A DNA stretch of 64,000 bases from Salisapilia sapeloensis CBS 127946 (taxonomy: Eukaryota > Protista > Oomycota). Location of the stretch: assembly GCA_023334545.1 (NCBI GenBank), contig JAADVB010000065.1, positions 1 to 64,000 on the forward strand. Direction: 5' to 3'. Both the position numbers and the translations under genes were made by a program. A model generated the notes under the pieces. That model was not told the origin of the DNA and did no database searches. It saw only the letters and a list, made by a program, of their open reading frames with translations. How positions within the stretch are numbered: the stretch's first letter is position 1; each line of letters opens with the position of its first letter. Positions 12,226 to 29,846 of the stretch are shown piece by piece.

Positions 12226-15200
12226 ATGTTCATCCAGCGCTACGTGTCCGCACTTGTGGATGCCGTACTGGGTAAATATGTGAAAAACTTGGATCCGGAG
12301 GCGCTCAAGATCAGCGTATGGAGCGGCGCGATTGAGATCGAAGCCGTGGAGCTCCAGCCAGGATTACCCATCCCAGGCCTCCCTGAAGTTCGTGTCGTCC
12401 AAGGAACACTCCATCAACTCAGGATCAATGTTCCGTGGCACAACCTAGCCAATCAACCGATGGAAGTAGCTGTCGAGGACGTGAGTCTGCTATTGGAAGT
12501 CGCTCACGAAGATGAGAACGCTTCATCACATACTGCAGAAGGTAGTGACGGCAAGAGTCAACGCCAAGAAGTACTACAAAGAAAACGTGCTACTATTGAT
12601 GCCATCGAACAGGCCACAAGCTTCCGCGAGCAGCAAAAGACACAGCAAAAGAACTCGAGTAGTGACGAAGGCGGATGGGCAAATAGTTTCTTCCTAAAGC
12701 TGCTTGTGAAGCTAGTCGATAATGTCCAGCTGTCCGTTCAAAGGGTTCACATACGACTGGAAGACCGGCAGTCGAATGTCCAACAGCCGTATGCAGTCGG
12801 CATCACGCTGCAGTCGCTCGTGATGCACTCTGCTGATGAAGATTGGAACTACACGATGGATGTGCGTGGTGGTGGATCTCCATCTGCACTCCTAAGGAAA
12901 AAACTAGAAGTCCATCGCTTTGGCATTTATTGGTCATTGCCGCTGCAGCAGGTGCCTTTAACTGTCTTCGAAGACAGCTTCGCCTTCACACGGCTGATGC
13001 AACGCTGCTTCTGGGCGACGACGCCAGAGCAACTAGCCCATATTCCAGCATTGATAGAGGATAGTGACTATCTGATTGCCCCTCTTTCCTTGTCGATGAA
13101 ACTAACCGTGAACGACGGCGATGGTAAGCTGGCGTTGACTCACCAAGAGCTAAGTGCTCGCGTCTTGTCGAGGCTCGGCACGCCTTGGATGGTCGAGACT
13201 ATCGACATGATCGGAGATGATGCGTGGGATGAATTCGTTCAGTCCATGCCTTCTCTCGCAGGCGGGCGCAAGTATACGTTGGGATTTGTGTTTTCAGAAG
13301 CATGGGCAGTGGCACGTGAGTGGTCGGAAGAAGAGGATGCGATTCCGACGCTAGAGCAGTTCAAACAAGCTCTTTCCAGTTGCCTGCTCTGGTCTGTCGA
13401 AGAAGTGAATCGAGTAGAGCGCAGTATCATCAAGTATCGTGAAGCTGTCGTGCAGGTGATGGACGAGAAAACGACGTACATTGACGCACAAGCAGACATT
13501 GATCATATCAATGTATCACTGTCTAGAGACCAGTACCTCAGCCAACTCTCTTTCGTCTCTTTCTTGACTAGCAGAAGGCGGCGAAAGCGCATTGCTGCCT
13601 TGCATCCAAAGCAAAGTGTGAAACAAAACCCGCGTGCCTGGTGGCGATTTGCAATCGAAGCAGTGTTGCTCGATGTGAGAGAGCGTATCGGTCGAGAAGA
13701 TTGGCGTGTGATGGACCATCAGCGACGTCAGCGGAAAAAGTATATGGAGTTGTATTTGCGTCTGTGGCACAGTTCTAGCTACGCAGCCACGCTCATTTCG
13801 AAAGGCGTGAAAGAAATGAGTAGTGAGGAAGCTGCCACAGCGTTTGACGATCTCGAGTACGAGTTGGAGACACCCAAGCTCTTGAGTCTTCGTCGTGCTG
13901 TTCGCAAAGACATGGCAAAGAAAGAGCTGCTGAAGCCAAAGTCCACCAAGACCTCAGAACAGACACCACAGACGAATGCAACGTGGTGGTCATGGCTTCG
14001 AGGCACTACGTCTTCTCCTCCTTCCCAAAGTGAAGAGAGTGCGTCGACTCCGGAGGATGAAAGGTGGAGCGAACAGGATACAAAGAAGCTTTATGAAGCT
14101 ATTGACTTCCACCCAGAAGAGGAAAGCATTGGCGAAGAAGATACATTGAATGCACAGACTGAGAGCGACTCTGAAAAAGCGTCAAACATGCAGCAGGTAC
14201 AAAAACGTAAAAAGTCCATGGGAGAACAGCAGCGTGTACTCTATCGTGTTCAGTCGACGCTGAAGCAAGCGACGCTGCAGCTCGGATGGAATCGCCACAG
14301 CGGCATGGGCAAACCACGCGACTTGCTACTGGCTGAATTTGACGACATGAACATCCAATTCCTTGTTCGTCCTTCTTCACTAGAAGTCGGTCTGCAGCTC
14401 CACGACGCGTACTTTTGCCAGAACGCATCGGACTTGGCGGATATTGTCAGGAGAGTGAAGCAGCAGTCGGTGTTTTCCACACGAGACTTTTTCCTTGAAC
14501 GCATGGACATGAACGAGATTCTGGAGAACCATCCAGAAGATGTCCAACAGCAGATGAGCAGTGTCCGACTGCGCCACTGCGAGAGGGAGCTGCCGGTGCT
14601 GGATTTAAGTCTTGCCTTGTATAGTGAAGAGCATGACCCAGACGATGCTAACGGCAGCGTCGTGGCAGAGGAAGGAGAGGTGGCCGGGTCGCACGCCACT
14701 GCGCAATACTCTCGAGTCATTCGCGTCTCGCTGGTAACGCAAGCAATCAAGTGCAACATCAACCTCGTCTTCCTGCTCAACCTCATGTCGTTCTTCCAGC
14801 GGCCTGTCAATGTGGACTTGTCTCGACTTGAAAACACGGCGTGGCGCAATGCACAACGGTTGCAGCGGTACAGCACACATCAGCTCAAGGAAGCTCTGGC
14901 GAGACGTACGAAGCTGGAGATGCAGCTGGATGTAGTGTCTCCATGGATCTCTATCGTGCGTGCTTCGGTGGACAAAGAGAAAGAGAGTTCGAGGAGGGTC
15001 GGCATCCTCTTGTTCTTGGGCCATCTGCGAGCGTCGACGTTGCATCCGACCAAGGAGAGACGGTCGAGCATGACGCCTCATACGTTCAGTAATGGAGAAG
15101 GAGACTTGGGCTCTGGCGCACAAGAGTTTATGGTGTCGAGCCCAACGGAAGAGCATCTATACGACGTCATTGATTTCTTTATCTCTGGCGTAGAAGTGCG

Positions 15201-18200
15201 TGTACTAGACAGTGTCCAACAGGATGCAGACGCTTTAACGGGAGATTGGCAGTACTTGCTGGAGAAGACTTCGTTAAAACTGAGCTCGCATTTGAGTGTG
15301 GCACCGAGAGACCCGACTATTCCACTGGTAAAGCTAGTGGGTGACGTCGCGACTGTGCAGCTGAATCTGTCCGCATCGAGCTTTCGCTCCCTCCTTTCGC
15401 TTGTGTACTCGTTCGCATACAACGTTAGCGATTTCAAAGAGCAGAATGCTCAAGTGGAAGAAATAGTGGATGTGGACGAAAACGATCAAGCGAGTAGCAA
15501 GGACACACGCAGTAGTTCTAGCCAAGTGCTACTGTCGCCGCCTCACTCCTCACATGGCATTGCTTCAGCCATGCGGAAGAAGAAGCGAATGGATTTCATG
15601 TCCACAACAGATTCACAGTCTGGGTCTTCCGAGCGGACCTCTGGAGGAGATGACAAGACACCTCTAGATAACGGAGTGCCTTCTTCCCCGACGCATCCAT
15701 TTGCAGCAACCGAGTCGTTCGGGACTGCTGCCACCATCGCTGCGTCCCACGCTGAAAAGGATCTCGAAGATCGAGATTTAATGAAACTATGGAGACGTGT
15801 GCTGTGCCACATGCGGTTCCACGTTGGCGAAATCGTGTTGAGATTACAGGTCAAAGAGATGGATGAACCGGGTACGCATAAGGTGATTGAGGCGAGACTG
15901 GGCGAGATCAACACGCGAGTCAAGATCCGATCGTATGACCGACGTCTCGAGTTTGGACTCGGTACATTTGTCCTGGAAGACATGGTACTTTCCCACTCGA
16001 CGAAAGAAAATGGGAAGCCCAACGTCATTCAAAGGAGGTTCATTATGGAATCAGGAGAAGCTGGGGAGAAGGAGATGCCGAAAAGCACGTCGGAGCATCT
16101 GATTCGATGGGCACTAACGAGTGTGAGCTCAGATGCACCGCTGCCCAAGGACAAAGGTCTATGCAAATACATTGCGTATGAGACACTCGTGCCTGATGCA
16201 ACTGCCAAGTATTCCGTCTGGCAAGATCCGTTGGTGACACCACTCTCGCTTGAAGCTAGCTTGCGCACACTTACGATCCACGTGCGTCAGGACACGATGG
16301 CTGAGATCATCGTCTTTTTTTTCAGTAGCAATCGCCCCACCGAGCCGGAACCTCCGAAAGAGACTGAGTCGTCACCAAAGAAGCGGGCGAGACCAAAGTC
16401 CAATGACCTGCCAGACCTGACGGAGGAAGATTTGCGTTCCGTCTCGTCATCTGACCGCCAAGTGCACGAATCGCTTTCTCGACGTCTTGGCGTGTGGGTA
16501 AAATCTTCGCTTCTTGAGAACGTAGCAGATAGTTCGTATGGATCGGATACAAAGCCTCCATCATGGTCAAAGCAAAGTACTGAAGCTGAGGAAAAAGCGG
16601 ACACTCCAGCACAGGAGGGAGACAAATGGGAAGATTTACCTGCAAAACTACAGCTACGTCTGCATGTAGACGGTCTCACCGTATTTCTGCATCAAGACGA
16701 AAAGGAAGTTGCCGAAGGAGCGTCGTCTGCCATCGTTAGTCTCTCAACGGAAAAGTTCTGTGGGTGCATTCACAAATTTCCGCGTTACATGAACATCTTC
16801 GCATCGCTCAGTTCTTTGAAACTTAGCGATACGTCGCTAACGGACCGCCATCATCGAGAAATCGTTTCACACGCGACGAGTCTCAAGGCGCACGAGAGTC
16901 CTACTCTTGAAAAGGAGTTTGGTCATGTCCCGACGGTTGAAGAAGTGCTGCAGACTTTAGAAGAGATTCCGGCTGTTTTCTCTTGTGCCATGCAGTTCTA
17001 CGGTCCAGATAATATCCAAGAGGCATGGCATCCCGGTTACTCGAACCGCTTCTCCGTGCGTCTCAAGTCCCCTCGTATCCGTGTACTGTACCGTTTCGTC
17101 GACGACATCCGCAACTACTTTTTCAATGGCATCTTGCTCCAAACGGTCATGTCGGTGTGGTATCGTGCTCGTCCTGAAATGTCATGGGAAGGCGATTTTC
17201 AGCTAGCTCAAGTAGCAACTGGACAGTCGTTCCAGTCCCACACAGAGTCGAACGATAAGAGTGGCGGCGAATCAACCGTCTTTGGCTCGGACGTGGTGTC
17301 CATGTTCCCTCTCTTAGACGTACAAATGGATGATGCTGTCTTGGAAATGCCACCGCATCGTGTGTCGTCTGAGGCTCTCATCTTACGTTACGACCGCTTC
17401 AAGTTCTCCAATGTTCACGTCTTGAACGAGTATGCTGATATGGATAATCGTGTGCTGGCGAAGGTGCTTTTGAATTCTTCCTTGTCACAGCTCAAGATGG
17501 AAGTTTCGACCTTGCGTATCGTGTCAAATATTCTACTCTTTACGGATGATGCACCAGGAATGAATTCAGGCGGAAGTTTCATGGAACAGAGTCTGCTAGG
17601 GTCCACGGACATTCATCTCGACATTAATTTGCGCACACTGTCAGCCATCAAAGTAGATATTGACTTCACGCCAGTACGTCTCGTGTGCAATCAAGAACAG
17701 TACGCCTTCCTCCTCCGAGTACCCTTCCAAAACCTACAAGAGCGTAGTCGCTATCGCTTCCCGATGCGATCGGCCGTAGAGCTACAGCATTTGCTAACTC
17801 GCGGTGGGAACCCTGAACGTCCGACCACACCACCGCCTTCAGAGCACTTTGAGGCCTCTGGTTTTTCGACGATGACAGGAGACATCATTACATCGATCAC
17901 ATCGGAAGTAGGAGAGGAGTCTGAAGACGATGCGTTTGACGAAGTGGGAGAGCAAGACGAGAAGCATGCGACTGTGGTGATCATCGTTCCTGAACTCACG
18001 ATGGAACTTTTGCGTGGATACCAGGGATACCAACCGTCCAGTAGTGGCGATTTGTCCATGGCAGACAAGGATAAAAAGTACCAAGGCTCGATTTGTGTCT
18101 TGGATTTCACCAAGTGCCGCACGCAGGTCGGCTATGCCTTCACCACGCGCAGGTTGGAGTCAGAGGTTACTATTGACGGCATCCATGTCCGTGATTCTCG

Positions 18201-21200
18201 AGCAGAGTCTCATATCTCTGAATCGTATCGCGATGTTGTCGTCTTTGAACAGCCTAGTGAAGACGAGTGGGATATGCTCAAGCAGACCAAGTCAGTACAA
18301 ATTCGCTTCGTGAAGGAAACTCGACAAGTGGAGGCAGGTAGTATCAAGCTGGAAGCGAGTGACAACAAGGAGGTACCTTCTGGAAGCCAAGATCACAGTC
18401 GTGGCAATAGCAATCTCTCTAATCCACCTTCTTCCTCCGAGACGAGGGAGAAAATGACGTCATCGAACCACGTACAAAGCTCAACGCGTAGTCGCGGAGG
18501 GCTTCGTAAGAGGAACACTTTGGCAGACTCCGTGACGGAACGCTCCAAGCTCTCTAATTCCCACTCTCGGCTTGTGTACGGTCGAGACATTGCGGAGTCA
18601 AGTGCGATCAGTCAACGGCTGCCAGGTAGACCTTTAGTCGATGAGAATCGAATGGAGTTGAATGTCGATGTACTCGGTTTCCGAGTCATTCCATCCAATA
18701 TTCACTACGATATTGTGCGCTTTGTACTGCATCGCGTCAGTAGTGCTGCTTATGACAGCGACAACGAAAGCACGACGAGCCGTAGCGATGGGAGAAGCAG
18801 TGAGTCCGGGGAAGACGGAGACGAGGATGAAGTCATCGATAGCGAGCAGTTGCTACCGTCCTATCGACTTATCTCGATCAATCTGACGCTCGGTCCATCG
18901 GCAGTACTGCTCGTAGAAGATCCATTTCGACAAAAGTCTCGTGCACTACGCTTTTCATGGGACGCGTCACTCTCGCTAGACTACTTGCGAACGATATACC
19001 CTAATGAATATATGGGGATTCAAGACTTCGACTGGATGGTGGACCGGAACCAAGTCTTTTTCAAGGGAGACATTAACAACATCCATGCCACGTCGAGGTT
19101 GTCGAAAGATAGCGTGTGGGCTGGAGGCGGCAATTTCTCTGCTGCAACGGCAGACTGTTTAAAACCTATCGGTCTTGGGTTCGAAATTCAAATGGACCTC
19201 GCCACTAGCTTTTTAGATTGTCGTGTCGCCTTTGATCGTATCATGGACCTTCGATTCGGGTACCTGGACTTTTGCACGACGTACGCTGCCTTGGAAAGCA
19301 TTTTGCGCATGTCGAGGTCTCGGTACGACAGTGAGAGTGAAGGTGCGAAGCGACCACGAGCGCACTCTTCATCCTCTGTGTCGTCCGCTACGAACGTCGA
19401 CCGATCCCCACCGTCTTCATCGTCCTCCTCTTCTGCTTCCGGCATGAATGCGTCGATGTATCGTACCGGATTGGCCGGCTCTCGAAAGAGATCCAACAGT
19501 GCGACGACCAAGTACGGCACTTCTCTAATCTACTTGATCTCTGCTAGCTTCCGCGGTCGTCTACAGACACGTCCTGTCGTTGGCATCTACAACTCTCCGT
19601 GGCGTAAGCGGTATCTAGTACTTCCGTACACGCCACAAGAGAGAAATCTAGTCGAAAGCGTCGCCTTCCGGATCCTGCCGGCACCAGGAAGCACGAAAGA
19701 GATTGGAGATGAAGTATACTATGGAGATCGGATCATCCTCGAAGTCGTTCCAAACCAGACCGAAGATATGTCTGCTCAGAAATCTCTTCGTAGCAATGCT
19801 GATGGACTCCAGCATCAAATGAGCTCCAGTCGATCACCTGAAGCAGGAGGTTTGTTAAGTGCTTCGATGACAGAGGACGCCAGTGCTCGGCGAATGCTAA
19901 TCAGCAAATACGACCGCCTTGGTGCTAATGGATACTTGGGTCTCGACGGTGCTGCTGGAACGTTTGAGACGACGATATGGAAGCACGGAACGACCGTATT
20001 CAACTCGGAGAAGAGCGTCGTGTTCGATCGAGATGTCATTGCGCTGGAAGAGATGACCATCTACCGTACATTCAGTCGTGCCGTGAAGAACCAGACCAGT
20101 CGAACGCCGGGTAATCGACAGCAGCCTGTACAATTTGGTTCGAGAGGAAAGAAAAAGCCTGATATGCAGGAGCTTACAGACTTGATGGGGACGAGTGCAA
20201 AGGAAGGTGGGGGCTATCTCATGTTCAATGGAGTTGGAGACGCACCGATTCCGTTCGCTTTGTCTATATCGACAGAACCGACGAAAGTAAACGATTCAGC
20301 GGAAACAACGAACGAGAATGAAACGAAGAAGAGAAGTGACTCATCCGATACAATGGACAAGGCCAAGCTTCCAGCAAAGACTCTTTTGGACAATTTGAAG
20401 GTCATCGAGTTCTCTCTACCCGGTGTCAACGCTACCATTGTCAACGATTATAACAACATGCTACTGCCGTTGCTTCACCTACGTGTGTCGAATTTGCATC
20501 TGGACGTGCGTGGTCAGCTCGACCAGCGCTTCAGTGCTCTCGCTCAACTCCGTTGTGGCGTTCAAGCATACAACTCCCAACTGGCTGTATGGGAGCCGTT
20601 TGTCGAAGACTTTAACGTCGATGCAGCATTACACGGTCGAGGCGGAGCACTATGTGACTACTGTCTGTCTGAACGACAGCAAGTGTCGCCCACTGGCATC
20701 AAGCTCCAGTGCGCTGGTCTCCCAACATGTCTTTTCCGCCCTGCCCGCACAGAAGTCTTCACTGAGGCACTCGCGCACTCGTGGCAGTCCAAGCATTTCA
20801 TCTACCGAGAGCTACTCCACCGATCGGATGGAGACGACGGGACAGTTACGGACGCAAACACGTTCGTGCTCGTCATCAAAGAGGACTTGAACATCAATCT
20901 TTCTCGCAACGTTGTGAACGTAATGCTGCACTTTGTAGCTCTTGTGACGCGCGTCGCTCCATCCGATGAGAGGTTGGCGATGCGTCTTGGTCCGTTCATC
21001 TACGTTGACAACAAGTCAGGTATCCCATTCCGTGTGGCACGCAATCAGTCCTCTGCATCAGGTCCACCACCTTCGGATGGTGTAAATCTCTTCAACAAGA
21101 GTCGGAATGAACTGCAGGATATGGTTCAGCCATCACTAGAGCAAGGTTTGGCGTCACCAACAGCTGACTGGATCACTGCCGAGAGTGGAGAACGAGTTGC

Positions 21201-24200
21201 AACCAATATCGTCGCACATGAAGCGCCTGCCGGGAGTGTCACGTCACCATTGCGTCGACTACTATGGTTGAAGCCACTTCCACCTTCCACCGAGAACTCG
21301 TCGCCACAGTCCACCACTTCGTCTTCATCTGCGACGAACAAGGCGGTGCCGGTGCCAATTGGATACTCCAATCGTAGTTTCCTCCACCTTGATAATGCGC
21401 ATGGATCATCTCAAGACCCATGGCGAGGGGAAAGCATCATTTGTGAAACTGTTGCAGAGCAAGGCACGCTAGTTCTTCGTCTGCGTAGTAAAGTCCAGAT
21501 CGCAAACTACTTATCTGTACCTGTCGAACTTGTCTATAACAATGGAGAATACCGTGAAGTCGTTTCTCCGAGCGGAGAGAAGCATGCGCACTACGTACCA
21601 GTGCAATTCCTCTCTCAAGGTGAAATTGCTTTCTGTCCGATGCTCGAAGGTGGTAGGCTACACAAGTCCAACTCGTTCCGGATCGAGTCCCTAGTTCAAC
21701 CCCCGGACACGCAAAAGATAACTCGGACGCAAAGCAAGTCGACCGCTCATGCTAAACGCGAGCCGGCCAAGATGAGACGTGCCCTTACTTTCTACTGGGA
21801 CGTCCATCCGGAAGCAGATACCGACGAGTCATTCGAAGCTGGACGGCCGCCGTTCCAGCTCGTGTTGTCGGCATCTCGGAAGGCGAATCGTCATGAGACG
21901 CACATCTCACTACGTGCTCCAGTGCAGCTAGAAAACTTGATCCCTTTCTCTCTCCTCTACCGGACAGTGTGCCTTAAATCCGAATCGGATGTCGGGTGGA
22001 TCGAAGGGAACGAAGAATCTTTCACTGGTACACACGGCCGCATTGCGTCTGGTGATCATGCTCATATTTCTGAACTGGAGATGCTCATGGATGGACGAGG
22101 TGAAAGCATGCAAGAGCTAGAGACACCGACAGTAGTGGCGCTCAGCGTCAGTCTCCCTGAAGTCCGAAAGGGGCTTTACAGTCAATGGAAGTACGGCACT
22201 TTCGTGTACGGCACAGCTTCCGTCGCGAGGCGTCTTGAACTTGATTTAGGTCCGTCCTACACGGAGGATGGGTCTGCACGACAGTTGGGGAAGCTACCGA
22301 TATGTGTCGAGGTAGAGCCTGTGGACAAAGCCCGGTCGATTGACGCGAAAGAGCAGATCGTCGACCCGCTAGCTCCAGTTATCGTACGACTGTATTGCGA
22401 GTACTGGCTCATCGATCGCACTGGCCTCGGTCTTCACTTTTATACACCATCAGGCGCGAGAATCACGACCGGTCGGACGAAACGTGTGACAGCAATGGAT
22501 GAGGAGTCCACAGACGGTGTGACGGCATCGAGTGTCTCGCTTGCAGTGTACTCTGGTGAGCCTAGTCAGAAGCTCTCTCGAATGAAGATCGGCGTCCCCA
22601 GCACACGAGGTCGAGAGGAAGTCCGGTCTGAAGTGTTTGACACAGGCGCAGTGGGCATCCGAGGCCAGGTGCTCGTGCCGTCATCATCCATGCAGACGCG
22701 GCGACTGGAGCAGACAACAGCAGGCGCAGCGTTGTTTAGTATCGGCGAAGACACGCCTGCCTCCAACGGCTCGACGACAGCAGCGCAGATGGATTTGTTT
22801 AAACAGCACGAGTTTGGTGTCATCGTAGAGCAAGGTCCTGCCAAATTCTCTCGCTCCAAAGTCGTGACATTAGTTCATCGTCATTACTTTGTGAATTCAT
22901 CCGACCGGTTCCAAGTTCACATTCGTCAGGAAGGCAGTTTAGATGAACGAGCGATCGTTCGTCTCGGACCACGCGAAAGTAACTATTTCCACTGGAGTGA
23001 CTCGAGACTGAGAGCAAGAGTACAGGTGCGTTTTGTACTTCCTGAATACGCAACTCAGGATGATGGAGAGAACAAACGGGCGATTGGAAATACGTCCGAG
23101 TGGAGCTCTCCATTCGAACTGTCATCCGTAGGAAACTTTGTATTGCGTCTGAAGAAGCCGCTGCAACGAGCCCCATCCTACTTGCCTCAATGCTTGGACG
23201 ATCGAAAGTACAAAGAGAGTCATCCGGAGGACTACATCGATGAGCTTGACGTGTACTATGAAGAGCGACAGATGCTGTCGAGCGGCCTTAAGCTCTCTGT
23301 CGCAGTCGAACTGCACGATCCGTCCGTCGTGGTGTACCTAGAGGAAGGAGAGAAGCTCGAAGCTCCTCCACCATCTGGTAATACCGACCCAGATTTGGAA
23401 ATGGCTGTCGAGGCATCACGTGATGAAGGCAATAGGAGCGCATTTGTACCGTTTAAAATCAAGAACGAATGTAGCAACCTGGAGCTCGTGGTCTGGCAGA
23501 AGACACTTGCAGGTGATGCACACACTGGTTTGCGCGTTGGATTTGAAGGGGGCGACCTCGTAAGACCTTTCCAGACTGTTGACTACGTTCCGTACGCCTT
23601 TGCAGGGCAGCCTTGTGTCTTTGTCCAAGTCCAGACATCAATTGGTCTAGATGATGACAAGGACGCAAGCGACAAGAAAAGTAAGCGCAACGCGAAGAGA
23701 CGGCGTAGACGGCGTAATTCTGGGGATCCACTAGGTGCTAGCGCTTCGCTCCCGAGTGGGACCAATACACAGGTCCTCACGAGCTTTGAGATTCAGCTGA
23801 ACAAGCTCCATCGACTACCCACGATGGATCTATCAGATAAGAAAACCAAGAGACGGCTGTGGGTCGAAGTGCGTTTGGACGAGACTGCAAAGACTCTGCT
23901 GGTGACAGACATGCTCCCGGGCGACTCCAGCGAACACAAGCGTCGACGTCGAGCCACACTGCTGCGTAGTTGGAAGAGATATAATGCTGCAGTCCTCTCC
24001 CTATCTCGTTTAATTGCAGCCCATAGCTCGACGTACGATCAGCCGGATATGTTTGAGTCCATGAACGAAGGTGATGAAGGCTTTAGTCGAAACAGTCGAA
24101 AGCATGTGCACTTTGCTGGGTACAGTCCAGAGAAGATTGACGAGCAGCAGCTAGATATGTACCCAGCATTTTCTGGAGTGACACGAGATCGAACGGTCGA

Positions 24201-27200
24201 AACTGACACTCAGAACGCCAAGATCGCGCTATGTGTACGTCTGGTGCATGTACTCAAGCTAGAAGAACTGTATCGACGTCACGGAACGACGGATTGGGCT
24301 TCCTGTAGACCGTACGTTACCATTCGTTTGGAAACAACCGGACAGCATACGGAGAGCAAGATCTATCCGCAGGCAGCCGCGATCCTTCCTCGATGGGTGC
24401 CTATTTTAACAGACAAGAAGAAGGCACCGTCCCCAGAACTCCAGCTTCTCATTGGTGCTGGTGACGACAAGCTAGATGCAACGCTCGTGATCGAGATCAG
24501 AGAACCTGATCGATATCTCTTCGGATCGACGCTCCTATCCGTCCTCGAAATGCCACTCCAAAAGTATTTGGAGAACGTCCGGACGTCACAGCATACCTAT
24601 GAACCGTTGTCAGCGCTTCAATTCTTGGCACCTGTGGAGATGGGCGACCAGAGCGAAGACAAGACGATGATCCGGTTGGAAATGTGTGCAGAGTACTATC
24701 CTCCAGGCTCCTTACAAGACTCAGATGAGAGCGTAGACGCGTTCGAACGGGTGCAACGTGCCATGCGACTAGCCCGCATCAAACGTCAGTTGGAAAGCCT
24801 TCGCAAGTCTCGCACTGATTTGCGCGGTCTTTTGGAGAAGGAGGCCGTCGACATCTCCACCGGTCACCATGACAAACACCTCCCCTCTGTCAGCACTGCC
24901 GCTTCTGTCGCGTCCAAGACAGTGTCGAGCGATAAGAAGATCCACAGATCAAGACGAACGTCCTTGTCGGAAATGTCAGACACGTCCAGTGTGACGAGTA
25001 TGTCGGTCGCATCATCCGTCGCGACGGAGGAAAGCAAAAGCTCGGACGACGCCTACGATGATTTGCGTGACGAACGCCAGCTCACTGCTGTCATGATCGG
25101 AGTGTCGAACCTACAAGTACCTGCATCCATGGTACGCCGTAGCGGACGCCGTGTGTACGGCAGTACGGAGCGCAAGGAAGTTCGTGAACCAAAGGTTTAC
25201 TGCACCATCACGTACAAGGAGTCGACTCGATCTGCCATGTCTGCCGTAGCAAAGCGTTCTAGCGAGAGTGAAGCAAAGAACGAGTTGGATGCGAATACTG
25301 GTGACGGCAGTGAGAGTAGTGCCGATAGCTCTCCCGACCGTCATCGTCACGTGCGCACGTATGAGTTTGCTAAAGGCCAGCGTCTGGGACTAGACCTCGT
25401 CTACCAGAATGGTCGAGTGCTCGTCCAAGGTGTTCTGTGTGGTGACGCTTGTGGACAGCTGCTTCATGAAGGCAAAGTTCGGATCGGAGATACGGTCGTC
25501 GCTGTGGATGGCCAGACAATTGTGAATCTGCATCGAGAAGCGTCCTTCCGAGCGATTGAAAAGGCGAGACAGCTTGGAACTGTTGATGAAGAGAGGGAAG
25601 AGGAAGCTCCAACGACATTTACGTTGTCTTTCTTGGACCAGCCGATGAGCCAGCGACCGACGTGGAGATCGCAGGAGTCTATCGAACGATCTGATGAAGA
25701 TCGAGGGAAGGAGGAAGAGGAGGAGATGGCAGGGTATGATGCCGAGTGGAATCGACGAGTAGAGTTTGTAGAAACTGCTCCATCGGCTGGTGATCGAACG
25801 TCTACTGCAACCAAGGAAGAATCGGTCCTGGTGCGGGTGTACCTTCGGAATGACGCTGTGGACCACGGACTATCAAACGCACAAGAGTCGAGCGTCGTGC
25901 CGTTCCTCTACTTCTTCGGAGATGACTCGACAATGGATCACTTGGACCATAGCAAACAGGATTCGAGGTTTGATGAGCTCTTGGGTGAGTGCTGGGTTCC
26001 ATTGCCTCCATTCAATACAGGCGACGCAACCTCAGCATTTGAAAATGCAGAGAGCGTCTTGTCCAGCGCAGTCGACCCACTGTCGATTGACTCTTCCCCT
26101 GATTCTGCTTTCTACGAACGAGTTTGTGCGTTGTATCTGCCACGCACGAGGTCTGGGCAGTCCAGCCGGAGGATGATGACGATGATCGGAGAGCTACGAC
26201 TTGCGCTCAAGTGGGACCTATTGGACCCGCTGGCTACGGCTAAAAGTAAGGAGGATCTGCGTATCTACAGCCAGATCGAGATGGCACACGTGTGTGTGTC
26301 TGTGATCGATGACGCTTCTTCATCTGCTCCTAGCAGCTCGTCCGGTCAAGCCCAGGAAGTGCTGAATATCTCCATGTCGAATAAGTTCGCGGATGCAGGC
26401 ATACAGCTGAGCTACGCATACATGAGTAGTGGTAAGCACGTGTTGAATGCTTCCGTCGGGCACTTCCAAATCGACAACCAGATGCTCGATACGGACTATC
26501 CTGTCTTTCTGCACCCCATGCGCTTGATCGACAATCAAGTGGAGCAGAGTGCACCGGATGAAGACGGCGCGGATACATCGCCTAGCATCCGTCTTCTACC
26601 GACGTTCCAGCTCATGACTGTCTTTGGCACCGAACCTGGCGTCGCCCGATTCGACTACATCTTTGCTCAACTGCAGGAGCTGGAGATCAAGCTGGAAGAC
26701 TCTACGTTAGTCGCACTTGCACATGTGCTGAGAGGTGTGAACTGGGGACTCCTGGACACTTCGTCTGGAAACTCGCAGCATGAGCGTCAGCCGTCTAAGT
26801 CCTTTGCCGACGACATGACTGGCACTGGTGCCGGCTACGAGACATCCGAGGATCAGCCAGAGCTGAACCTAGCGCTCCGACTGCTGGAGAAGGAATGGTC
26901 GTCTCCTGTCCGTATCCTCGCGTCTTCTGCCGGTGCCATGACCATCTCATCTTCGGCTGAAAGCCACCACACTGGTACGACCAAGGTGTTATTGCGATGG
27001 CTACTCCTGTGTCCAGTTAAAGTCAATGTGACATTTACAAGCACAGCGGATCGAGCTCGACTGCTTTCACTCTTATCGCCCGACATGTCGTCCACACTAC
27101 GTGCCGTCATCAGTGCTGCAGCGGCACTCATGTCGAACTTGGACCAAGCTCCAATCAAGATTCCAGAGTTTTACGTTGAAAACTTGCTCGAAACGACACG

Positions 27201-28857
27201 TACGCTTGCGTTCTACGGCGTCCAGCATTATGTCCACCATGGCCTACGCAGTTGGTATAACCTCATGGGCTCTGTCGATGTCCTAGGCAATCCGATCGGA
27301 CTTGTGAGCACACTTGGCACTGGTGTCAAAGACTTTTTCTATACACCAGCGCAGATGCTACTAGACGATGAAGACGGTAGCATCCGAATTTCCAACTTGC
27401 GTACAGGCATGACGAAAGGCTCCAAAAGCTTGCTGCGTAACACTGCCGTCGGTATCTTCCATACGACTGGGAAGATCACAGAGACACTCGGCAAAGGTCT
27501 CTCCATGCTCGCGCTAGATGACCAGTATACGCTGCATCGACAACGTCAGTTGTCGAAACAGAGTCGAGAGATCCAGGACTTGGGCGGAGCCATCACCGTC
27601 GGTAGCAGGGGACTAATTGGAGGACTGTGGGATGGCGTCAAGGGCGTCGTGTCTGCACCGGTGGAAGGTGCCGAAGTCGATGGCGCGGGCGGATTCGTCC
27701 TTGGTATTGGCAAAGGATTTGCTGGGTTAGTCGTCAAGCCGACTGCAGGCTTCTTGGATCTATTAACGAGTCTTTCGCGAGGAGCGAAGAGTAGTGCAGA
27801 AGCTATTGACGGAGGAGACCACGACTTCCAGACCGTGACACGGTTCCGACTACCACGTCGGTTCTGTGCAGATGGCGTCATCGTGTCGTACTCTTCTCGT
27901 GAAGCGAAGGGGTATGCTGTGCTCTTGCTGACGTCTCTGGACAAGACGGACGAGTACGTCTACCATGTGGACTATGGTCTTGAATCTCGAGGCATGGTCT
28001 TGCTCACGGATAAGCGAGTGGTGTGCTTAAGTGCAAAGAGTGGTCAGAAACTATGGGAGTTAGCATTGGACTCGACGCTCGTGGTACAGGTAGCAGGTAT
28101 CATGCTTTCGATCGGCCAGGCATCTGCCGCTCAGAAGACGTACAACATTGAATGCGACAATGAGATCGTTGCACTCAACTTCCAAGTCGCCGTGGATTCA
28201 GCTCGAGTTGATCCCTCCGCTACGCGCTACTTGCTGCTAAATCTCGAAAAGAATCAGGAGGAAGAGACGAGGAGAGGGATGAAGATGGTTAAGTCCAAGG
28301 GTCGAACAATCGATAGGAGAGATGCAGGAACGGAGCGAACGGATTTGCGTCTATTAATGGAAAACGTGCAGGATACCAAGGTTACTGGTTTGTCGGAGGA
28401 AGACTTGCAAGCGCAGCCTCTACGAAGTGTACGCGTGGAACTGTGCCATTTGCATAACCAAGATGCGCACTCGAACGTCCCGTCGCGGACAGTCGATCAT
28501 CTACTTTCATTCACGGTCTTTCAGATCCAGGTATACGGCGGTCCGTACCAATGGACTGTCTTCCGTCGGTACAGTCAGTTTCGAGAGCTCGTTTCCGCGC
28601 TTGAAGCTTCTGGCTATAATCTGGACTCAATGCCGTCGCTGCCACCGCGCACGTTTTTGCCCAGCACACGAGACGCTGTAGCCAAGCACCGACAAGAAGC
28701 GTTGACAGTTTTCTTGCAGGCAGCTGTAATGCATTCTGCGATTAGTCGCAGCTCGCCCATGCTTGAGTTTGTCACGAGTGAGGCGCAGGAGATGCGGGTT
28801 AGCTTACCACCTCGATCGCCTGGTATTCTCGGTGAAGACGACGAAGATGAGCAGTAA
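12226..28857 (+). CDS. VPS13: VPS13-family bridge-like lipid transfer protein, 5543 aa, single exon, with C2, PDZ and C-terminal PX domains
   Basis: Chorein_N start (LGKYVKNLDPEALKISVWSGAIE), NPRAWWRFAI, YNSQLAVWEPFVEDF, VAB/SHR-BD region (FSRSKVVTLVHRHYFVN), FQIDNQM, C-terminal GSVDVLGNPIGL and ATG2_C-like GLVVKPTAGFLD. Confidence 0.95.
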   Translation: MFIQRYVSALVDAVLGKYVKNLDPEALKISVWSGAIEIEAVELQPGLPIPGLPEVRVVQGTLHQLRINVPWHNLANQPMEVAVEDVSLLLEVAHEDENASSHTAEGSDGKSQRQEVLQRKRATIDAIEQATSFREQQKTQQKNSSSDEGGWANSFFLKLLVKLVDNVQLSVQRVHIRLEDRQSNVQQPYAVGITLQSLVMHSADEDWNYTMDVRGGGSPSALLRKKLEVHRFGIYWSLPLQQVPLTVFEDSFAFTRLMQRCFWATTPEQLAHIPALIEDSDYLIAPLSLSMKLTVNDGDGKLALTHQELSARVLSRLGTPWMVETIDMIGDDAWDEFVQSMPSLAGGRKYTLGFVFSEAWAVAREWSEEEDAIPTLEQFKQALSSCLLWSVEEVNRVERSIIKYREAVVQVMDEKTTYIDAQADIDHINVSLSRDQYLSQLSFVSFLTSRRRRKRIAALHPKQSVKQNPRAWWRFAIEAVLLDVRERIGREDWRVMDHQRRQRKKYMELYLRLWHSSSYAATLISKGVKEMSSEEAATAFDDLEYELETPKLLSLRRAVRKDMAKKELLKPKSTKTSEQTPQTNATWWSWLRGTTSSPPSQSEESASTPEDERWSEQDTKKLYEAIDFHPEEESIGEEDTLNAQTESDSEKASNMQQVQKRKKSMGEQQRVLYRVQSTLKQATLQLGWNRHSGMGKPRDLLLAEFDDMNIQFLVRPSSLEVGLQLHDAYFCQNASDLADIVRRVKQQSVFSTRDFFLERMDMNEILENHPEDVQQQMSSVRLRHCERELPVLDLSLALYSEEHDPDDANGSVVAEEGEVAGSHATAQYSRVIRVSLVTQAIKCNINLVFLLNLMSFFQRPVNVDLSRLENTAWRNAQRLQRYSTHQLKEALARRTKLEMQLDVVSPWISIVRASVDKEKESSRRVGILLFLGHLRASTLHPTKERRSSMTPHTFSNGEGDLGSGAQEFMVSSPTEEHLYDVIDFFISGVEVRVLDSVQQDADALTGDWQYLLEKTSLKLSSHLSVAPRDPTIPLVKLVGDVATVQLNLSASSFRSLLSLVYSFAYNVSDFKEQNAQVEEIVDVDENDQASSKDTRSSSSQVLLSPPHSSHGIASAMRKKKRMDFMSTTDSQSGSSERTSGGDDKTPLDNGVPSSPTHPFAATESFGTAATIAASHAEKDLEDRDLMKLWRRVLCHMRFHVGEIVLRLQVKEMDEPGTHKVIEARLGEINTRVKIRSYDRRLEFGLGTFVLEDMVLSHSTKENGKPNVIQRRFIMESGEAGEKEMPKSTSEHLIRWALTSVSSDAPLPKDKGLCKYIAYETLVPDATAKYSVWQDPLVTPLSLEASLRTLTIHVRQDTMAEIIVFFFSSNRPTEPEPPKETESSPKKRARPKSNDLPDLTEEDLRSVSSSDRQVHESLSRRLGVWVKSSLLENVADSSYGSDTKPPSWSKQSTEAEEKADTPAQEGDKWEDLPAKLQLRLHVDGLTVFLHQDEKEVAEGASSAIVSLSTEKFCGCIHKFPRYMNIFASLSSLKLSDTSLTDRHHREIVSHATSLKAHESPTLEKEFGHVPTVEEVLQTLEEIPAVFSCAMQFYGPDNIQEAWHPGYSNRFSVRLKSPRIRVLYRFVDDIRNYFFNGILLQTVMSVWYRARPEMSWEGDFQLAQVATGQSFQSHTESNDKSGGESTVFGSDVVSMFPLLDVQMDDAVLEMPPHRVSSEALILRYDRFKFSNVHVLNEYADMDNRVLAKVLLNSSLSQLKMEVSTLRIVSNILLFTDDAPGMNSGGSFMEQSLLGSTDIHLDINLRTLSAIKVDIDFTPVRLVCNQEQYAFLLRVPFQNLQERSRYRFPMRSAVELQHLLTRGGNPERPTTPPPSEHFEASGFSTMTGDIITSITSEVGEESEDDAFDEVGEQDEKHATVVIIVPELTMELLRGYQGYQPSSSGDLSMADKDKKYQGSICVLDFTKCRTQVGYAFTTRRLESEVTIDGIHVRDSRAESHISESYRDVVVFEQPSEDEWDMLKQTKSVQIRFVKETRQVEAGSIKLEASDNKEVPSGSQDHSRGNSNLSNPPSSSETREKMTSSNHVQSSTRSRGGLRKRNTLADSVTERSKLSNSHSRLVYGRDIAESSAISQRLPGRPLVDENRMELNVDVLGFRVIPSNIHYDIVRFVLHRVSSAAYDSDNESTTSRSDGRSSESGEDGDEDEVIDSEQLLPSYRLISINLTLGPSAVLLVEDPFRQKSRALRFSWDASLSLDYLRTIYPNEYMGIQDFDWMVDRNQVFFKGDINNIHATSRLSKDSVWAGGGNFSAATADCLKPIGLGFEIQMDLATSFLDCRVAFDRIMDLRFGYLDFCTTYAALESILRMSRSRYDSESEGAKRPRAHSSSSVSSATNVDRSPPSSSSSSSASGMNASMYRTGLAGSRKRSNSATTKYGTSLIYLISASFRGRLQTRPVVGIYNSPWRKRYLVLPYTPQERNLVESVAFRILPAPGSTKEIGDEVYYGDRIILEVVPNQTEDMSAQKSLRSNADGLQHQMSSSRSPEAGGLLSASMTEDASARRMLISKYDRLGANGYLGLDGAAGTFETTIWKHGTTVFNSEKSVVFDRDVIALEEMTIYRTFSRAVKNQTSRTPGNRQQPVQFGSRGKKKPDMQELTDLMGTSAKEGGGYLMFNGVGDAPIPFALSISTEPTKVNDSAETTNENETKKRSDSSDTMDKAKLPAKTLLDNLKVIEFSLPGVNATIVNDYNNMLLPLLHLRVSNLHLDVRGQLDQRFSALAQLRCGVQAYNSQLAVWEPFVEDFNVDAALHGRGGALCDYCLSERQQVSPTGIKLQCAGLPTCLFRPARTEVFTEALAHSWQSKHFIYRELLHRSDGDDGTVTDANTFVLVIKEDLNINLSRNVVNVMLHFVALVTRVAPSDERLAMRLGPFIYVDNKSGIPFRVARNQSSASGPPPSDGVNLFNKSRNELQDMVQPSLEQGLASPTADWITAESGERVATNIVAHEAPAGSVTSPLRRLLWLKPLPPSTENSSPQSTTSSSSATNKAVPVPIGYSNRSFLHLDNAHGSSQDPWRGESIICETVAEQGTLVLRLRSKVQIANYLSVPVELVYNNGEYREVVSPSGEKHAHYVPVQFLSQGEIAFCPMLEGGRLHKSNSFRIESLVQPPDTQKITRTQSKSTAHAKREPAKMRRALTFYWDVHPEADTDESFEAGRPPFQLVLSASRKANRHETHISLRAPVQLENLIPFSLLYRTVCLKSESDVGWIEGNEESFTGTHGRIASGDHAHISELEMLMDGRGESMQELETPTVVALSVSLPEVRKGLYSQWKYGTFVYGTASVARRLELDLGPSYTEDGSARQLGKLPICVEVEPVDKARSIDAKEQIVDPLAPVIVRLYCEYWLIDRTGLGLHFYTPSGARITTGRTKRVTAMDEESTDGVTASSVSLAVYSGEPSQKLSRMKIGVPSTRGREEVRSEVFDTGAVGIRGQVLVPSSSMQTRRLEQTTAGAALFSIGEDTPASNGSTTAAQMDLFKQHEFGVIVEQGPAKFSRSKVVTLVHRHYFVNSSDRFQVHIRQEGSLDERAIVRLGPRESNYFHWSDSRLRARVQVRFVLPEYATQDDGENKRAIGNTSEWSSPFELSSVGNFVLRLKKPLQRAPSYLPQCLDDRKYKESHPEDYIDELDVYYEERQMLSSGLKLSVAVELHDPSVVVYLEEGEKLEAPPPSGNTDPDLEMAVEASRDEGNRSAFVPFKIKNECSNLELVVWQKTLAGDAHTGLRVGFEGGDLVRPFQTVDYVPYAFAGQPCVFVQVQTSIGLDDDKDASDKKSKRNAKRRRRRRNSGDPLGASASLPSGTNTQVLTSFEIQLNKLHRLPTMDLSDKKTKRRLWVEVRLDETAKTLLVTDMLPGDSSEHKRRRRATLLRSWKRYNAAVLSLSRLIAAHSSTYDQPDMFESMNEGDEGFSRNSRKHVHFAGYSPEKIDEQQLDMYPAFSGVTRDRTVETDTQNAKIALCVRLVHVLKLEELYRRHGTTDWASCRPYVTIRLETTGQHTESKIYPQAAAILPRWVPILTDKKKAPSPELQLLIGAGDDKLDATLVIEIREPDRYLFGSTLLSVLEMPLQKYLENVRTSQHTYEPLSALQFLAPVEMGDQSEDKTMIRLEMCAEYYPPGSLQDSDESVDAFERVQRAMRLARIKRQLESLRKSRTDLRGLLEKEAVDISTGHHDKHLPSVSTAASVASKTVSSDKKIHRSRRTSLSEMSDTSSVTSMSVASSVATEESKSSDDAYDDLRDERQLTAVMIGVSNLQVPASMVRRSGRRVYGSTERKEVREPKVYCTITYKESTRSAMSAVAKRSSESEAKNELDANTGDGSESSADSSPDRHRHVRTYEFAKGQRLGLDLVYQNGRVLVQGVLCGDACGQLLHEGKVRIGDTVVAVDGQTIVNLHREASFRAIEKARQLGTVDEEREEEAPTTFTLSFLDQPMSQRPTWRSQESIERSDEDRGKEEEEEMAGYDAEWNRRVEFVETAPSAGDRTSTATKEESVLVRVYLRNDAVDHGLSNAQESSVVPFLYFFGDDSTMDHLDHSKQDSRFDELLGECWVPLPPFNTGDATSAFENAESVLSSAVDPLSIDSSPDSAFYERVCALYLPRTRSGQSSRRMMTMIGELRLALKWDLLDPLATAKSKEDLRIYSQIEMAHVCVSVIDDASSSAPSSSSGQAQEVLNISMSNKFADAGIQLSYAYMSSGKHVLNASVGHFQIDNQMLDTDYPVFLHPMRLIDNQVEQSAPDEDGADTSPSIRLLPTFQLMTVFGTEPGVARFDYIFAQLQELEIKLEDSTLVALAHVLRGVNWGLLDTSSGNSQHERQPSKSFADDMTGTGAGYETSEDQPELNLALRLLEKEWSSPVRILASSAGAMTISSSAESHHTGTTKVLLRWLLLCPVKVNVTFTSTADRARLLSLLSPDMSSTLRAVISAAAALMSNLDQAPIKIPEFYVENLLETTRTLAFYGVQHYVHHGLRSWYNLMGSVDVLGNPIGLVSTLGTGVKDFFYTPAQMLLDDEDGSIRISNLRTGMTKGSKSLLRNTAVGIFHTTGKITETLGKGLSMLALDDQYTLHRQRQLSKQSREIQDLGGAITVGSRGLIGGLWDGVKGVVSAPVEGAEVDGAGGFVLGIGKGFAGLVVKPTAGFLDLLTSLSRGAKSSAEAIDGGDHDFQTVTRFRLPRRFCADGVIVSYSSREAKGYAVLLLTSLDKTDEYVYHVDYGLESRGMVLLTDKRVVCLSAKSGQKLWELALDSTLVVQVAGIMLSIGQASAAQKTYNIECDNEIVALNFQVAVDSARVDPSATRYLLLNLEKNQEEETRRGMKMVKSKGRTIDRRDAGTERTDLRLLMENVQDTKVTGLSEEDLQAQPLRSVRVELCHLHNQDAHSNVPSRTVDHLLSFTVFQIQVYGGPYQWTVFRRYSQFRELVSALEASGYNLDSMPSLPPRTFLPSTRDAVAKHRQEALTVFLQAAVMHSAISRSSPMLEFVTSEAQEMRVSLPPRSPGILGEDDEDEQ

Positions 28858-29782: not shown

Positions 29783-29799
29783 GCTCATTTTTAAATTCT
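29783..29799 (+). promoter_or_regulatory. Oomycete INR+FPR core promoter
   Basis: GCTCATTTTTAAATTCT, 47 nt upstream of the copy-6 ATG. Confidence 0.6.
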
Positions 29800-29846
29800 C
29801 TGCACAGGGAGCAAGCACAAACAAATTTAGTCGCATCATTGATACA

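What the first reader, a model, noticed from the sequence alone, without database searches (positions are those of the whole stretch)
28430..28800. VPS13 with a fused C-terminal PX domain
After the PH-like domain the chain ends in a PX fold (FTVFQIQV...WTVFRRYSQFRELVSAL...PSLPPRTF...KHRQEALTVFLQ...SPMLEFV) that keeps the RRYS basic motif used for PI3P binding. Known: yeast Vps13 is recruited to endosomes by the separate PX adaptor Ypt35, and human VPS13A binds SNX5. Inference: this paralog carries its own phosphoinositide-targeting module, an architecture I do not recognise as described.
Basis: partly seen in the sequence, partly recalled or inferred. Interest (0 to 1): 0.7.

Follow-up and report, generated by a model that had tools for sequence, protein, structure and literature searches.

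The report
Oomycete VPS13 with built-in PX domain
A giant lipid-transfer bridge protein (VPS13) of an oomycete really does end in its own PX membrane-targeting domain. This fusion is transcribed, is conserved across oomycetes and was not found in the VPS13 papers I searched, but it is visible in public protein databases and is a modest variation on a known theme.

Summary
Window 12226-28857 (+) is one uninterrupted 5543-aa ORF with VPS13_N, VPS13_M, VAB and VPS13_C (PH-like) regions. After a disordered linker of about 40 aa, it ends in a PX domain: Pfam PF00787 at 50 bits (cut-off 21.6), and a predicted fold matching the SGK3/CISK PX at Z 12.8.

Spliced, RNA-like contigs of 6.5-14.4 kb from four runs (one study) cross PH, linker, PX and stop codon without a joint or mismatch. 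The same architecture occurs in about 20 full-length orthologues across oomycetes (Phytophthora, downy mildews, Pythium, Lagenidium, Saprolegnia, Achlya, Aphanomyces) and in one unnamed metagenomic eukaryote. The next-closest VPS13s (35% identity or less), including other oomycete paralogues, carry no PX.

Three of the four canonical PI3P-contact residues are kept. The fourth, the Lys of the PPK loop, is an invariant Arg. The likely function is direct (in cis) docking of the bridge's C-terminal end onto PI3P membranes. Yeast and human VPS13 get this in trans from the PX adaptors Ypt35 and SNX5. Lipid binding is inferred, not shown.

None of the VPS13 or PX papers I opened, nor the other search hits by title and abstract, mentions the architecture, but automatic database annotation already displays it. 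The scan also noted it in an overlapping window. Verdict: new variant of a known kind, moderate interest.

The parts
12226..28857 (+). Complete intron-less VPS13-family ORF, 5543 aa plus stop
   Evidence: Single ORF from ATG to stop. There are no internal stops. Contig X2 record 4 (14,445 nt) is colinear from the left edge of the laid stretch (25500) to 29055.
12238..15501 (+). VPS13_N (chorein) region, aa 5-1092
   Evidence: PF12624: E 1.2e-94 for aa 5-296, and E 5e-44 for the continuation over aa 412-1092.
20290..20616 (+). VPS13_M match, aa 2689-2797
   Evidence: PF25033, E 1.4e-10. This is below the family's gathering score.
22381..23160 (+). VAB (adaptor-binding) repeats, best stretch aa 3386-3645
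   Evidence: PF25036, E 1.3e-19, 70.5 bits against a cut-off of 22.6.
27847..28284 (+). VPS13_C / PH-like domain, aa 5208-5353
   Evidence: PF25037, E 6e-12. The model shows seven strands plus a C-terminal helix at pLDDT 70-88. VIA-align gives Z 9.9-8.5 to PH domains. The ESM Atlas match is a VPS13_C cluster.
28285..28410 (+). Flexible linker between the PH-like and PX domains, aa 5354-5395
   Evidence: pLDDT is below 50 in both models. The distal half is conserved in Peronosporales.
28411..28803 (+). PX domain, aa 5396-5526, with an insertion of about 22 aa between strands 1 and 2 and an extra terminal strand
   Evidence: PF00787 at 50.1 bits. A PDB profile search hits CISK, Nischarin, SNX16 and SGK3 PX domains at E 1.6e-13 to 1e-10.
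28564..28572 (+). R5447-R5448-Y5449, the Arg that would bind the 3-phosphate and the aromatic residue beside it
   Evidence: Both Arg residues are invariant in 11 of 11 oomycete tails. The aromatic residue is Tyr here and Phe in the other 10.
28648..28650 (+). R5475 in the LPPRTF loop, at the position of the canonical Lys of the PsiPxxPxK loop
   Evidence: Invariant Arg in 11 of 11. The motif definition is from PMC6449406.
28690..28692 (+). R5489, the Arg of helix alpha-2 (canonical fourth contact)
   Evidence: Invariant in 11 of 11. It aligns with the Arg of the EKRKQGL segment of CISK-PX.
28804..28857 (+). Short Pro/acidic C-terminal tail and stop codon
   Evidence: Translation. pLDDT is below 50.

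Best explanation
The window encodes an oomycete orthologue of a VPS13A/C/D-type bridge-like lipid-transfer protein. This orthogroup acquired a PX domain, tethered by a flexible linker of about 40 aa behind the usual C-terminal PH-like domain, no later than the common ancestor of the sampled oomycetes (Saprolegniales plus the peronosporalean orders). The PX domain most probably binds PI3P. It would thereby dock the C-terminal, lipid-delivering end of the bridge directly onto PI3P-rich membranes (endosomes, vacuole, autophagic membranes). This would give the protein an adaptor-independent address. Yeast Vps13 and human VPS13A obtain the same address in trans from PX-containing adaptors (Ypt35, SNX5) that bind the VAB domain. 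The VAB domain is retained, so other adaptors could still redirect the protein. Shown here: the ORF, the domains, co-transcription, and conservation. Inferred: lipid specificity, the organelle, and the direction of lipid flow.
For: The 5543-aa ORF is continuous. Pfam finds VPS13_N, VPS13_M, VAB, VPS13_C and PX in one chain. The PX and PH-like folds are confirmed structurally.

Contigs from four runs carry GT..AG joints in the neighbouring gene and leave intergenic stretches at zero depth, so they behave as RNA. They cover 25500 to 28956-29055 with no joint, gap or mismatch.

Twenty long proteins carry PF12624 + PF00787 with 46-70% identity in the tail: 19 named oomycete proteins and one metagenomic protein. 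Fragmentary models from Aphanomyces, Saprolegnia diclina and Phytophthora boehmeriae also carry VPS13_C + PX or match the tail profile.

E-values drop sharply from 1e-127 (orthologues with PX) to 1e-40 (VPS13s without PX), and the second group includes other oomycete paralogues.

The canonical pocket residues R-R-(Y/F), R and R are invariant, and the secondary-site position is not conserved. The nearest solved PX domains are those of SGK3/CISK, Nischarin and SNX16. In the human survey SNX16 binds PtdIns3P exclusively and SGK3 binds PtdIns3P plus PtdIns(3,4)P2; Nischarin is not mentioned in that paper's text (PMC6449406). The trans-acting precedents are in PMC6168272 and PMC10053439.
Against: No lipid-binding or localisation data exist. 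The PPK-loop Lys, one of four side chains that PMC6449406 calls strictly required, is Arg in all orthologues. The stacking Tyr is Phe in 10 of 11. The RNA evidence is assembled contigs labelled only 'RNA? (a guess)', not raw or long reads. Contigs cannot exclude a minor isoform that ends before the PX. No FFAT motif was found, so the partner membrane of the N-terminal end is unknown.
Confidence: 0.65

Rival explanations
1. The PX fold is real and fused, but it does not read PI3P. It would bind another phosphoinositide or acidic lipid, or serve as a protein-binding module, as the SNX5 PX does.
For: The Lys-to-Arg change in the PsiPxxPxK loop is fixed in all orthologues. Only a minority of human PX domains (12 of 39 tested) are PI3P-exclusive, and several bind no lipid (PMC6449406). 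The fold has an extra insertion between strands 1 and 2 and an extra terminal strand.
Against: The 3-phosphate Arg, the aromatic residue and the alpha-2 Arg are invariant, and Arg keeps the charge of the Lys. The His/Tyr secondary site used for other phosphoinositides is not conserved (V, C, H or Y) and lacks the flanking basic run. The closest solved relatives include PX domains shown to bind PtdIns3P (SNX16, SGK3).
Confidence: 0.25
2. The PX is a separate downstream gene, or an assembly or annotation artefact, and is not part of the VPS13 protein.
For: Several public gene models of the orthologue are fragmentary (499-2171 aa). One Globisporangium model lacks a full PX.
Against: There is no stop codon between the PH-like and PX domains in a 16.6-kb frame. 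Contigs from four runs are colinear and identical across the junction. Twenty full-length homologues (19 named oomycete proteins and one metagenomic) carry both domains.
Confidence: 0.02
3. The PX is a decaying relic with no current function.
For: None specific. The extreme C-terminal tail after the PX is poorly conserved.
Against: Forty-three columns are invariant across 11 tails that span Saprolegniales to Peronosporales, and they include every pocket residue. The core of the model has pLDDT above 90.
Confidence: 0.03

Closest known systems
Yeast Vps13 with the adaptor Ypt35 (a PxP motif plus a PI3P-binding PX domain)
   Same: A PX domain supplies endosome or vacuole (PI3P) targeting to a VPS13 lipid bridge (PMC6168272).
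   Different: In yeast the PX sits on a separate protein that binds the VAB domain through a PhixxPhixPxPPhi motif. Here the PX is covalently attached behind the PH-like domain, and no PxP motif exists anywhere in the protein. I found no evidence that the oomycete PX derives from Ypt35.
Human VPS13A with SNX5 (PX-BAR)
   Same: A PX-domain protein recruits a VPS13 to endosomal contact sites (PMC10053439).
   Different: The interaction is in trans, through the VAB domain. The SNX5 PX is a non-PI3P binder (PMC6449406), whereas the PX here keeps the canonical pocket apart from the K-to-R change.
VPS13 paralogues with extra accessory domains (UBA and ricin lectin in VPS13D, beta-sandwich in VPS13B, PH/C2/Vps62 in plant VPS13M1/2)
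   Same: These are lineage-specific folded modules added near the C-terminal third of the bridge, presumably for targeting or partner binding (PMC7613979).
   Different: PX does not occur in the text of that survey or of the Archaeplastida survey (PMC10683392). The PX is appended at the extreme C-terminus rather than inserted in a loop.
PX-containing lipid-transfer or tether proteins: Mdm1/SNX13-14-19-25 and Lec1/Ypr097w
   Same: A PX domain is fused to a lipid-handling module so that one end docks on a PI3P membrane at a contact site (PMC6168272; PMC9648973).
   Different: The lipid-binding folds are unrelated (PXA/Nexin_C helical cavities, not an RBG bridge).
PX domains of SGK3/CISK, Nischarin and SNX16
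   Same: These are the nearest solved PX domains by sequence profile (E 1.6e-13 to 1e-10) and by fold (Z 12.8-11.6).
   Different: Identity is only 20-27%. They sit at the N-termini of kinases, LRR proteins or coiled-coil proteins, not on a lipid-transfer protein.

Membership tests
VPS13 (bridge-like lipid transfer protein) | N-terminal chorein / VPS13_N region | tested here: met
   PF12624 at E 1.2e-94, 318 bits against a cut-off of 80. The match extends to aa 1092.
VPS13 (bridge-like lipid transfer protein) | VAB (adaptor-binding) repeat domain | tested here: met
   PF25036 at E 1.3e-19, 70.5 bits against a cut-off of 22.6.
VPS13 (bridge-like lipid transfer protein) | C-terminal VPS13_C / PH-like domain | tested here: met
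   PF25037 at E 6e-12. PH-like fold at Z 9.9. The Atlas match is a VPS13_C cluster.
VPS13 (bridge-like lipid transfer protein) | Continuous repeating beta-groove with a hydrophobic channel; bulk lipid transfer | not tested
Lipid transfer needs an assay.
PX domain (PF00787) | Sequence match above the curated threshold | tested here: met
   50.1 bits against a gathering score of 21.6. A PDB profile search gives 42 PX chains at E up to 0.01.
PX domain (PF00787) | Fold of three beta strands followed by three alpha helices | tested here: met
   Models. Foldseek probability 1.00 to PX structures. VIA-align Z 12.8.
Canonical PI3P-binding PX (Group II of PMC6449406) | Four strictly conserved side chains: Arg (3-phosphate), Tyr/Phe, Lys of PsiPxxPxK (1-phosphate), Arg of helix alpha-2 | tested here: inconclusive
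   R5448, Y5449 and R5489 are present and invariant (Tyr or Phe at the aromatic position). The Lys position is an invariant Arg, R5475. The assignment of equivalent positions rests on the CISK alignment and on my knowledge of p40phox.
Canonical PI3P-binding PX (Group II of PMC6449406) | Measured selective PI3P binding | not testable with these tools
   Needs liposome or ITC assays.
Ypt35-type Vps13 adaptor | PxP motif PhixxPhixPxP(Phi/T) in an unstructured region near the lipid-binding domain | tested here: not met
   There is no P-x-P in the last 200 aa and no consensus match anywhere in the 5543 aa.

The most novel reading that the evidence does not exclude
The fusion is a natural 'Rosetta stone'. 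It would show that PI3P/PX-based recruitment is a general, ancient way of addressing VPS13 bridges. In oomycetes one VPS13 would have become hard-wired to PI3P membranes, independently of adaptors, possibly to feed lipid to the unusually PI3P-rich membrane systems of these organisms during sporulation, vacuole or autophagosome expansion. This would give a clean genetic handle (delete or swap the PX) to test how the address of one end of a lipid bridge sets the direction and site of bulk lipid flow.
Probability: 0.2. Interest if true: 0.6.

Novelty: new variant of a known kind. Interest (0 to 1): 0.4.

Why it matters
How VPS13 bridges are addressed to particular organelles is a central question in the contact-site field. 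The known answers are trans-acting adaptors (Ypt35, Mcp1, Spo71, SNX5, Rab7 and others). A VPS13 with a covalently attached, conserved PX domain is an adaptor-free solution made by evolution. It supports the idea that PI3P membranes are a recurrent VPS13 destination, and it gives a simple construct for testing whether lipid-based docking alone suffices. The orthogroup appears restricted to oomycetes, many of which are important plant and animal pathogens, so it is also a lineage marker and a candidate for functional study. It remains a domain-shuffling variant of a well-known family. It is already visible in automatic database annotation, so it is not a surprise of the first order.

Tried and rejected
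1. I looked for VPS13-PX outside oomycetes.
- The profile search of 1.84 billion representatives with the PX tail gave VPS13-type hits only from oomycetes or unnamed metagenomes. Every source-named hit among the ten top hits I looked up was an oomycete. Only the best 150 of 1713 hits are listed, so independent fusions with a distant PX cannot be excluded.
- The word-based search with the VPS13_C/PH region listed 33 non-orthologous VPS13s, none with PF00787.

2. I tried to name the organism behind metagenomic P0027 by searching a neighbouring 1086-aa gene. Only unnamed hits came back, so it is left as 'unnamed eukaryote, oomycete-level similarity' (60% identity in the VPS13_C/PH region).

3. 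The two ESM Atlas feature searches gave only generic VPS13 clusters or nothing. The Atlas fold search matched the two domains separately, and no cluster combined VPS13_C with PX.

4. An FFAT-like motif scan for the ER end found nothing in the window protein or in three of four orthologues.

5. The idea that the conserved tail after the PX (VRVSLPP(L/R)SP) is a built-in PxP motif for the protein's own VAB domain is rejected. There is no P-x-P spacing and no consensus match.

6. Literature: six full-text searches and eight papers opened found no description of VPS13-PX. One search was a badly designed query and was swamped by oomycete terms.

7. The exact species of the window was not determined. 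The best tail identity is 70% and the best conserved-region identity 77%, to Phytophthora and Nothophytophthora.

Full report
**What is in the sequence**

Window 12226..28857 (+) is a single ORF of 5543 codons from ATG to stop, with no internal stop. Pfam places these regions in one chain:
- VPS13_N at aa 5-296 (E 1.2e-94), continuing to aa 1092
- VPS13_M at about aa 2689-2797
- VAB at about aa 3386-3645 (E 1.3e-19)
- VPS13_C at aa 5208-5304 (E 6e-12)
- PX (PF00787) at aa 5441-5518

The PX hit scores E 1.1e-11 in context. On the isolated tail it scores 4.1e-13 / 50.1 bits, against a gathering score of 21.6.

**Structure**

I made an 11-sequence alignment of orthologous tails (A1) and a 12-sequence alignment of the last 400 residues (A2), and folded both.
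- The 200-aa model has a confident core (82 residues at pLDDT 90 or more). Its order of elements is strand, insertion, two strands, helix, proline-rich loop, long helix, short helices and a final short strand.
- Foldseek against the PDB returns only PX domains at the top: Nischarin, SNX16, SNX7, CISK/SGK3, Bem1, SNX3 and p40phox (probability 1.00, E 4e-5 upward).
- The 400-aa model resolves two folded units separated by a stretch with pLDDT below 50.
- VIA-align against 48,161 PDB representatives matches model residues 253-383 to PX domains: designed CISK-PX at Z 12.8 (rmsd 2.2, 101 aligned), SNX16 at Z 12.2, and p40phox bound to PI3P at Z 10.6. It matches residues 77-188 to PH domains: Trio at Z 9.9 and the DENND3 PH-like domain at Z 9.8.
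- The ESM Atlas fold search matches the first unit to a VPS13_C cluster.

The C-terminus is therefore PH-like (aa about 5208-5353), then a flexible linker (aa about 5354-5395), then PX (aa about 5396-5526, nt 28411-28803), then a short tail.

**Is it one gene product?**

Four runs from one study (two samples, 'organism A') hold the stretch. They are kept as contigs and labelled only 'RNA? (a guess)'.

When laid on 25500-31400 they behave as RNA. They carry GT..AG joints at 30045/30112 and 30196/30261 in the next gene. They have zero depth at 29440-29636 and at 30819-31400.

Their long contigs (6.5 to 14.4 kb) run from the left edge of the laid stretch to 28956-29055 without a joint, an indel or a single differing letter. 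They pass straight through the PH-like domain, linker, PX and stop codon. Contigs cannot prove single molecules. Together with an uninterrupted reading frame, though, they leave very little room for a separate PX gene.

**Conservation and distribution**

I searched the 5.8-billion-protein collection with the tail alone, restricted to candidates of comparable full length. It returned 19 proteins of 4270-5682 aa, all oomycete:
- many Phytophthora species, Nothophytophthora, Plasmopara, Peronospora and Bremia (67-70% identity)
- Pythium oligandrum (60%), Lagenidium (53%), Saprolegnia (48%) and Achlya (46%)

All carry precomputed PF12624 and PF00787, except a Globisporangium model whose PX is truncated by a mis-predicted 3' end.

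An exhaustive profile search of 1.84 billion representatives found 14 hits below 1e-30. I looked up ten of the top hits, eight of them below 1e-30. Those with source names are all oomycete, including Aphanomyces euteiches, Saprolegnia diclina and Phytophthora boehmeriae fragments. The exceptions are unnamed metagenome proteins.

One of these, P0027 (3781 aa), is a full VPS13 with a terminal PX on a gene-dense 38.8-kb ENA metagenome scaffold. It is 41% identical to the window protein over the last 1030 residues, with the same domain order.

Searching with the VPS13_C/PH region instead shows a sharp step. The orthologues with PX score E 1e-127 or better (60% identity or more). Everything else starts at 8e-40 (35% identity or less) and lacks PF00787. 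That second group includes vertebrate VPS13C, other protist VPS13s, and other oomycete paralogues of 3300-3700 aa that carry a PDZ_2 hit.

The PX-bearing protein is therefore a distinct orthogroup of VPS13A/C/D type. It is at least as old as the split between Saprolegniales and Peronosporales, and I did not detect it outside oomycete-like sequences. The limits are that one search lists only the best 150 of 1713 hits and that depends on shared words. An independent VPS13-PX fusion with a distant PX elsewhere in eukaryotes is not excluded.

**Predicted ligand site**

PMC6449406 defines canonical PI3P recognition by four strictly conserved side chains around the PsiPxxPxK loop. The first Arg binds the 3-phosphate, and the Lys binds the 1-phosphate. 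The paper also defines a secondary site, centred on a His/Tyr in helix alpha-1 with neighbouring basic residues, for other phosphoinositides.

In the window the corresponding residues are R5447-R5448-Y5449 (FRRYSQF), R5475 (LPPRTF) and R5489 (HRQEAL). Across 11 oomycete tails they read R, R, Y/F (Tyr only here, Phe in the other ten), R and R, each invariant apart from the aromatic.

The equivalence of positions rests on the HMM alignment to CISK-PX and on my knowledge of the p40phox-PI3P structure (R58, Y59, K92, R105). Three of the four canonical residues are thus kept, and the Lys is replaced by a fixed Arg.

The secondary-site position is V, C, H or Y and is followed by mostly acidic or neutral residues. 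The nearest solved relatives are the SGK3/CISK, Nischarin and SNX16 PX domains. In the human survey SNX16 binds PtdIns3P exclusively and SGK3 binds PtdIns3P as well as PtdIns(3,4)P2. I read this as a probable PI3P binder, but the K-to-R change keeps it an inference.

**Mechanism proposed**

- Yeast Vps13 reaches endosomes and the vacuole through Ypt35, a PI3P-binding PX protein whose PxP motif binds the VAB domain (PMC6168272).
- Human VPS13A uses the PX-BAR protein SNX5 (PMC10053439).

The oomycete protein carries the PX itself on a flexible leash after the PH-like domain. The simplest reading is constitutive, adaptor-independent docking of the C-terminal end on PI3P membranes. The retained VAB domain leaves room for additional adaptors.

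The protein contains no PxP consensus anywhere. It is therefore not a wholesale Ypt35 fusion, and the conserved VRVSLPP(L/R)SP tail is not a self-binding PxP motif. No FFAT-like motif was found, so the membrane held by the N-terminal end is unknown.

**Comparison with what is known, and novelty**

The RBG-superfamily survey lists UBA, lectin, beta-sandwich, PH, C2 and Vps62 accessory domains and even mentions a Phytophthora VPS13B, but the term 'phox' does not occur in it. The following also lack any mention:
- The Archaeplastida VPS13 survey does not contain 'PX domain' or 'phox'.
- A cross-eukaryote FYVE/PX architecture survey does not mention VPS13.
- A Phytophthora sojae FYVE-PX paper does not mention VPS13.

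None of the 18 papers containing both 'VPS13' and 'Phytophthora' has a title or abstract that deals with an oomycete VPS13. I opened only two of them. PX domains fused to other lipid-handling modules are known, for example Mdm1/SNX13-family proteins and Lec1.

On the other hand, the deposited oomycete proteins already carry automatic VPS13 + PX domain hits. Some are named 'PX domain-containing protein' in UniRef. This scan also noted the same feature in an overlapping window (s1-307877).

I therefore class it as a new variant of a known kind. It is real, conserved, sensible, and apparently undescribed in print, but it is neither hidden nor mechanistically startling.

**Limits**
- The species of the window was not identified. 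It is a peronosporalean-grade oomycete, 70-77% identical to Phytophthora and Nothophytophthora in this protein.
- The RNA evidence is from assembled contigs of one study.
- Lipid binding, localisation and lipid transfer are untested.

Noticed in passing
window 28956-29126: Just 3' of the VPS13 stop, the RNA-like contigs carry two short joints whose ends read CT..AC (28956/29011, skips 54; run X4) and CT..GC (29055/29126, skips 70; runs X2, X3). These would be GT..AG and GC..AG introns on the minus strand. This suggests a convergent or antisense spliced transcript overlapping the VPS13 3' UTR. No convincing ORF is there.
   Followed up: partly
window 29702-30656: A downstream plus-strand gene is covered by separate contigs of about 0.7 kb with GT..AG introns of 69 nt (one run only), 66 nt and 64 nt. 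It includes the 108-aa ORF 30271-30597.
   Followed up: no
window 25375-25572: A weak PDZ match (PF00595, 17.5 bits, below the cut-off of 23.2) lies inside the VPS13 body. Several orthologues are named 'PDZ domain-containing protein' by UniRef. A Saprolegnia diclina fragment has a C2 hit (E 6e-5) between VAB and VPS13_C. The earlier notes s1-296484 and s1-308022 concern this region.
   Followed up: partly
P0029 (JGI metagenome protein, 2202 aa): This protein has six tandem PX domains (PF00787 at 200 bits in six stretches) and nothing else recognisable. It is an unusual multi-PX architecture.
   Followed up: no
L001 9262-21346: In the metagenomic relative, the VPS13_N start is called as a separate 251-aa gene that overlaps the 3781-aa gene by 17 bases. 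This is probably a frameshift or a short intron, so the real protein would be about 4030 aa.
   Followed up: no
public orthologue models P0019, P0020, P0021, P0023, P0025: Many deposited gene models of this orthologue are broken or mis-joined. Examples are Phytophthora cinnamomi (1338 aa, with the N- and C-termini fused), Phytophthora boehmeriae (499 aa), Aphanomyces (676-892 aa), Saprolegnia diclina (2171 aa) and Globisporangium splendens (5682 aa, reading through the PX into unrelated sequence). Database architecture counts will therefore under-report the fusion.
   Followed up: partly
window 28765-28815 (aa 5514-5530): A conserved motif follows the last PX helix: VRVSLPP(L/R)SP in Peronosporales, and (V/I)HVA(H/R) in Saprolegniales. 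The model makes its start a short extra strand. It does not fit the Vps13-adaptor PxP consensus, and its role is unknown.
   Followed up: partly
window 12226-28857: At 5543 aa the protein is about 1800 aa longer than vertebrate VPS13C. Long stretches (aa 1093-2688 and 3646-5207) have no Pfam hit above threshold. No FFAT-like motif is present.
   Followed up: no
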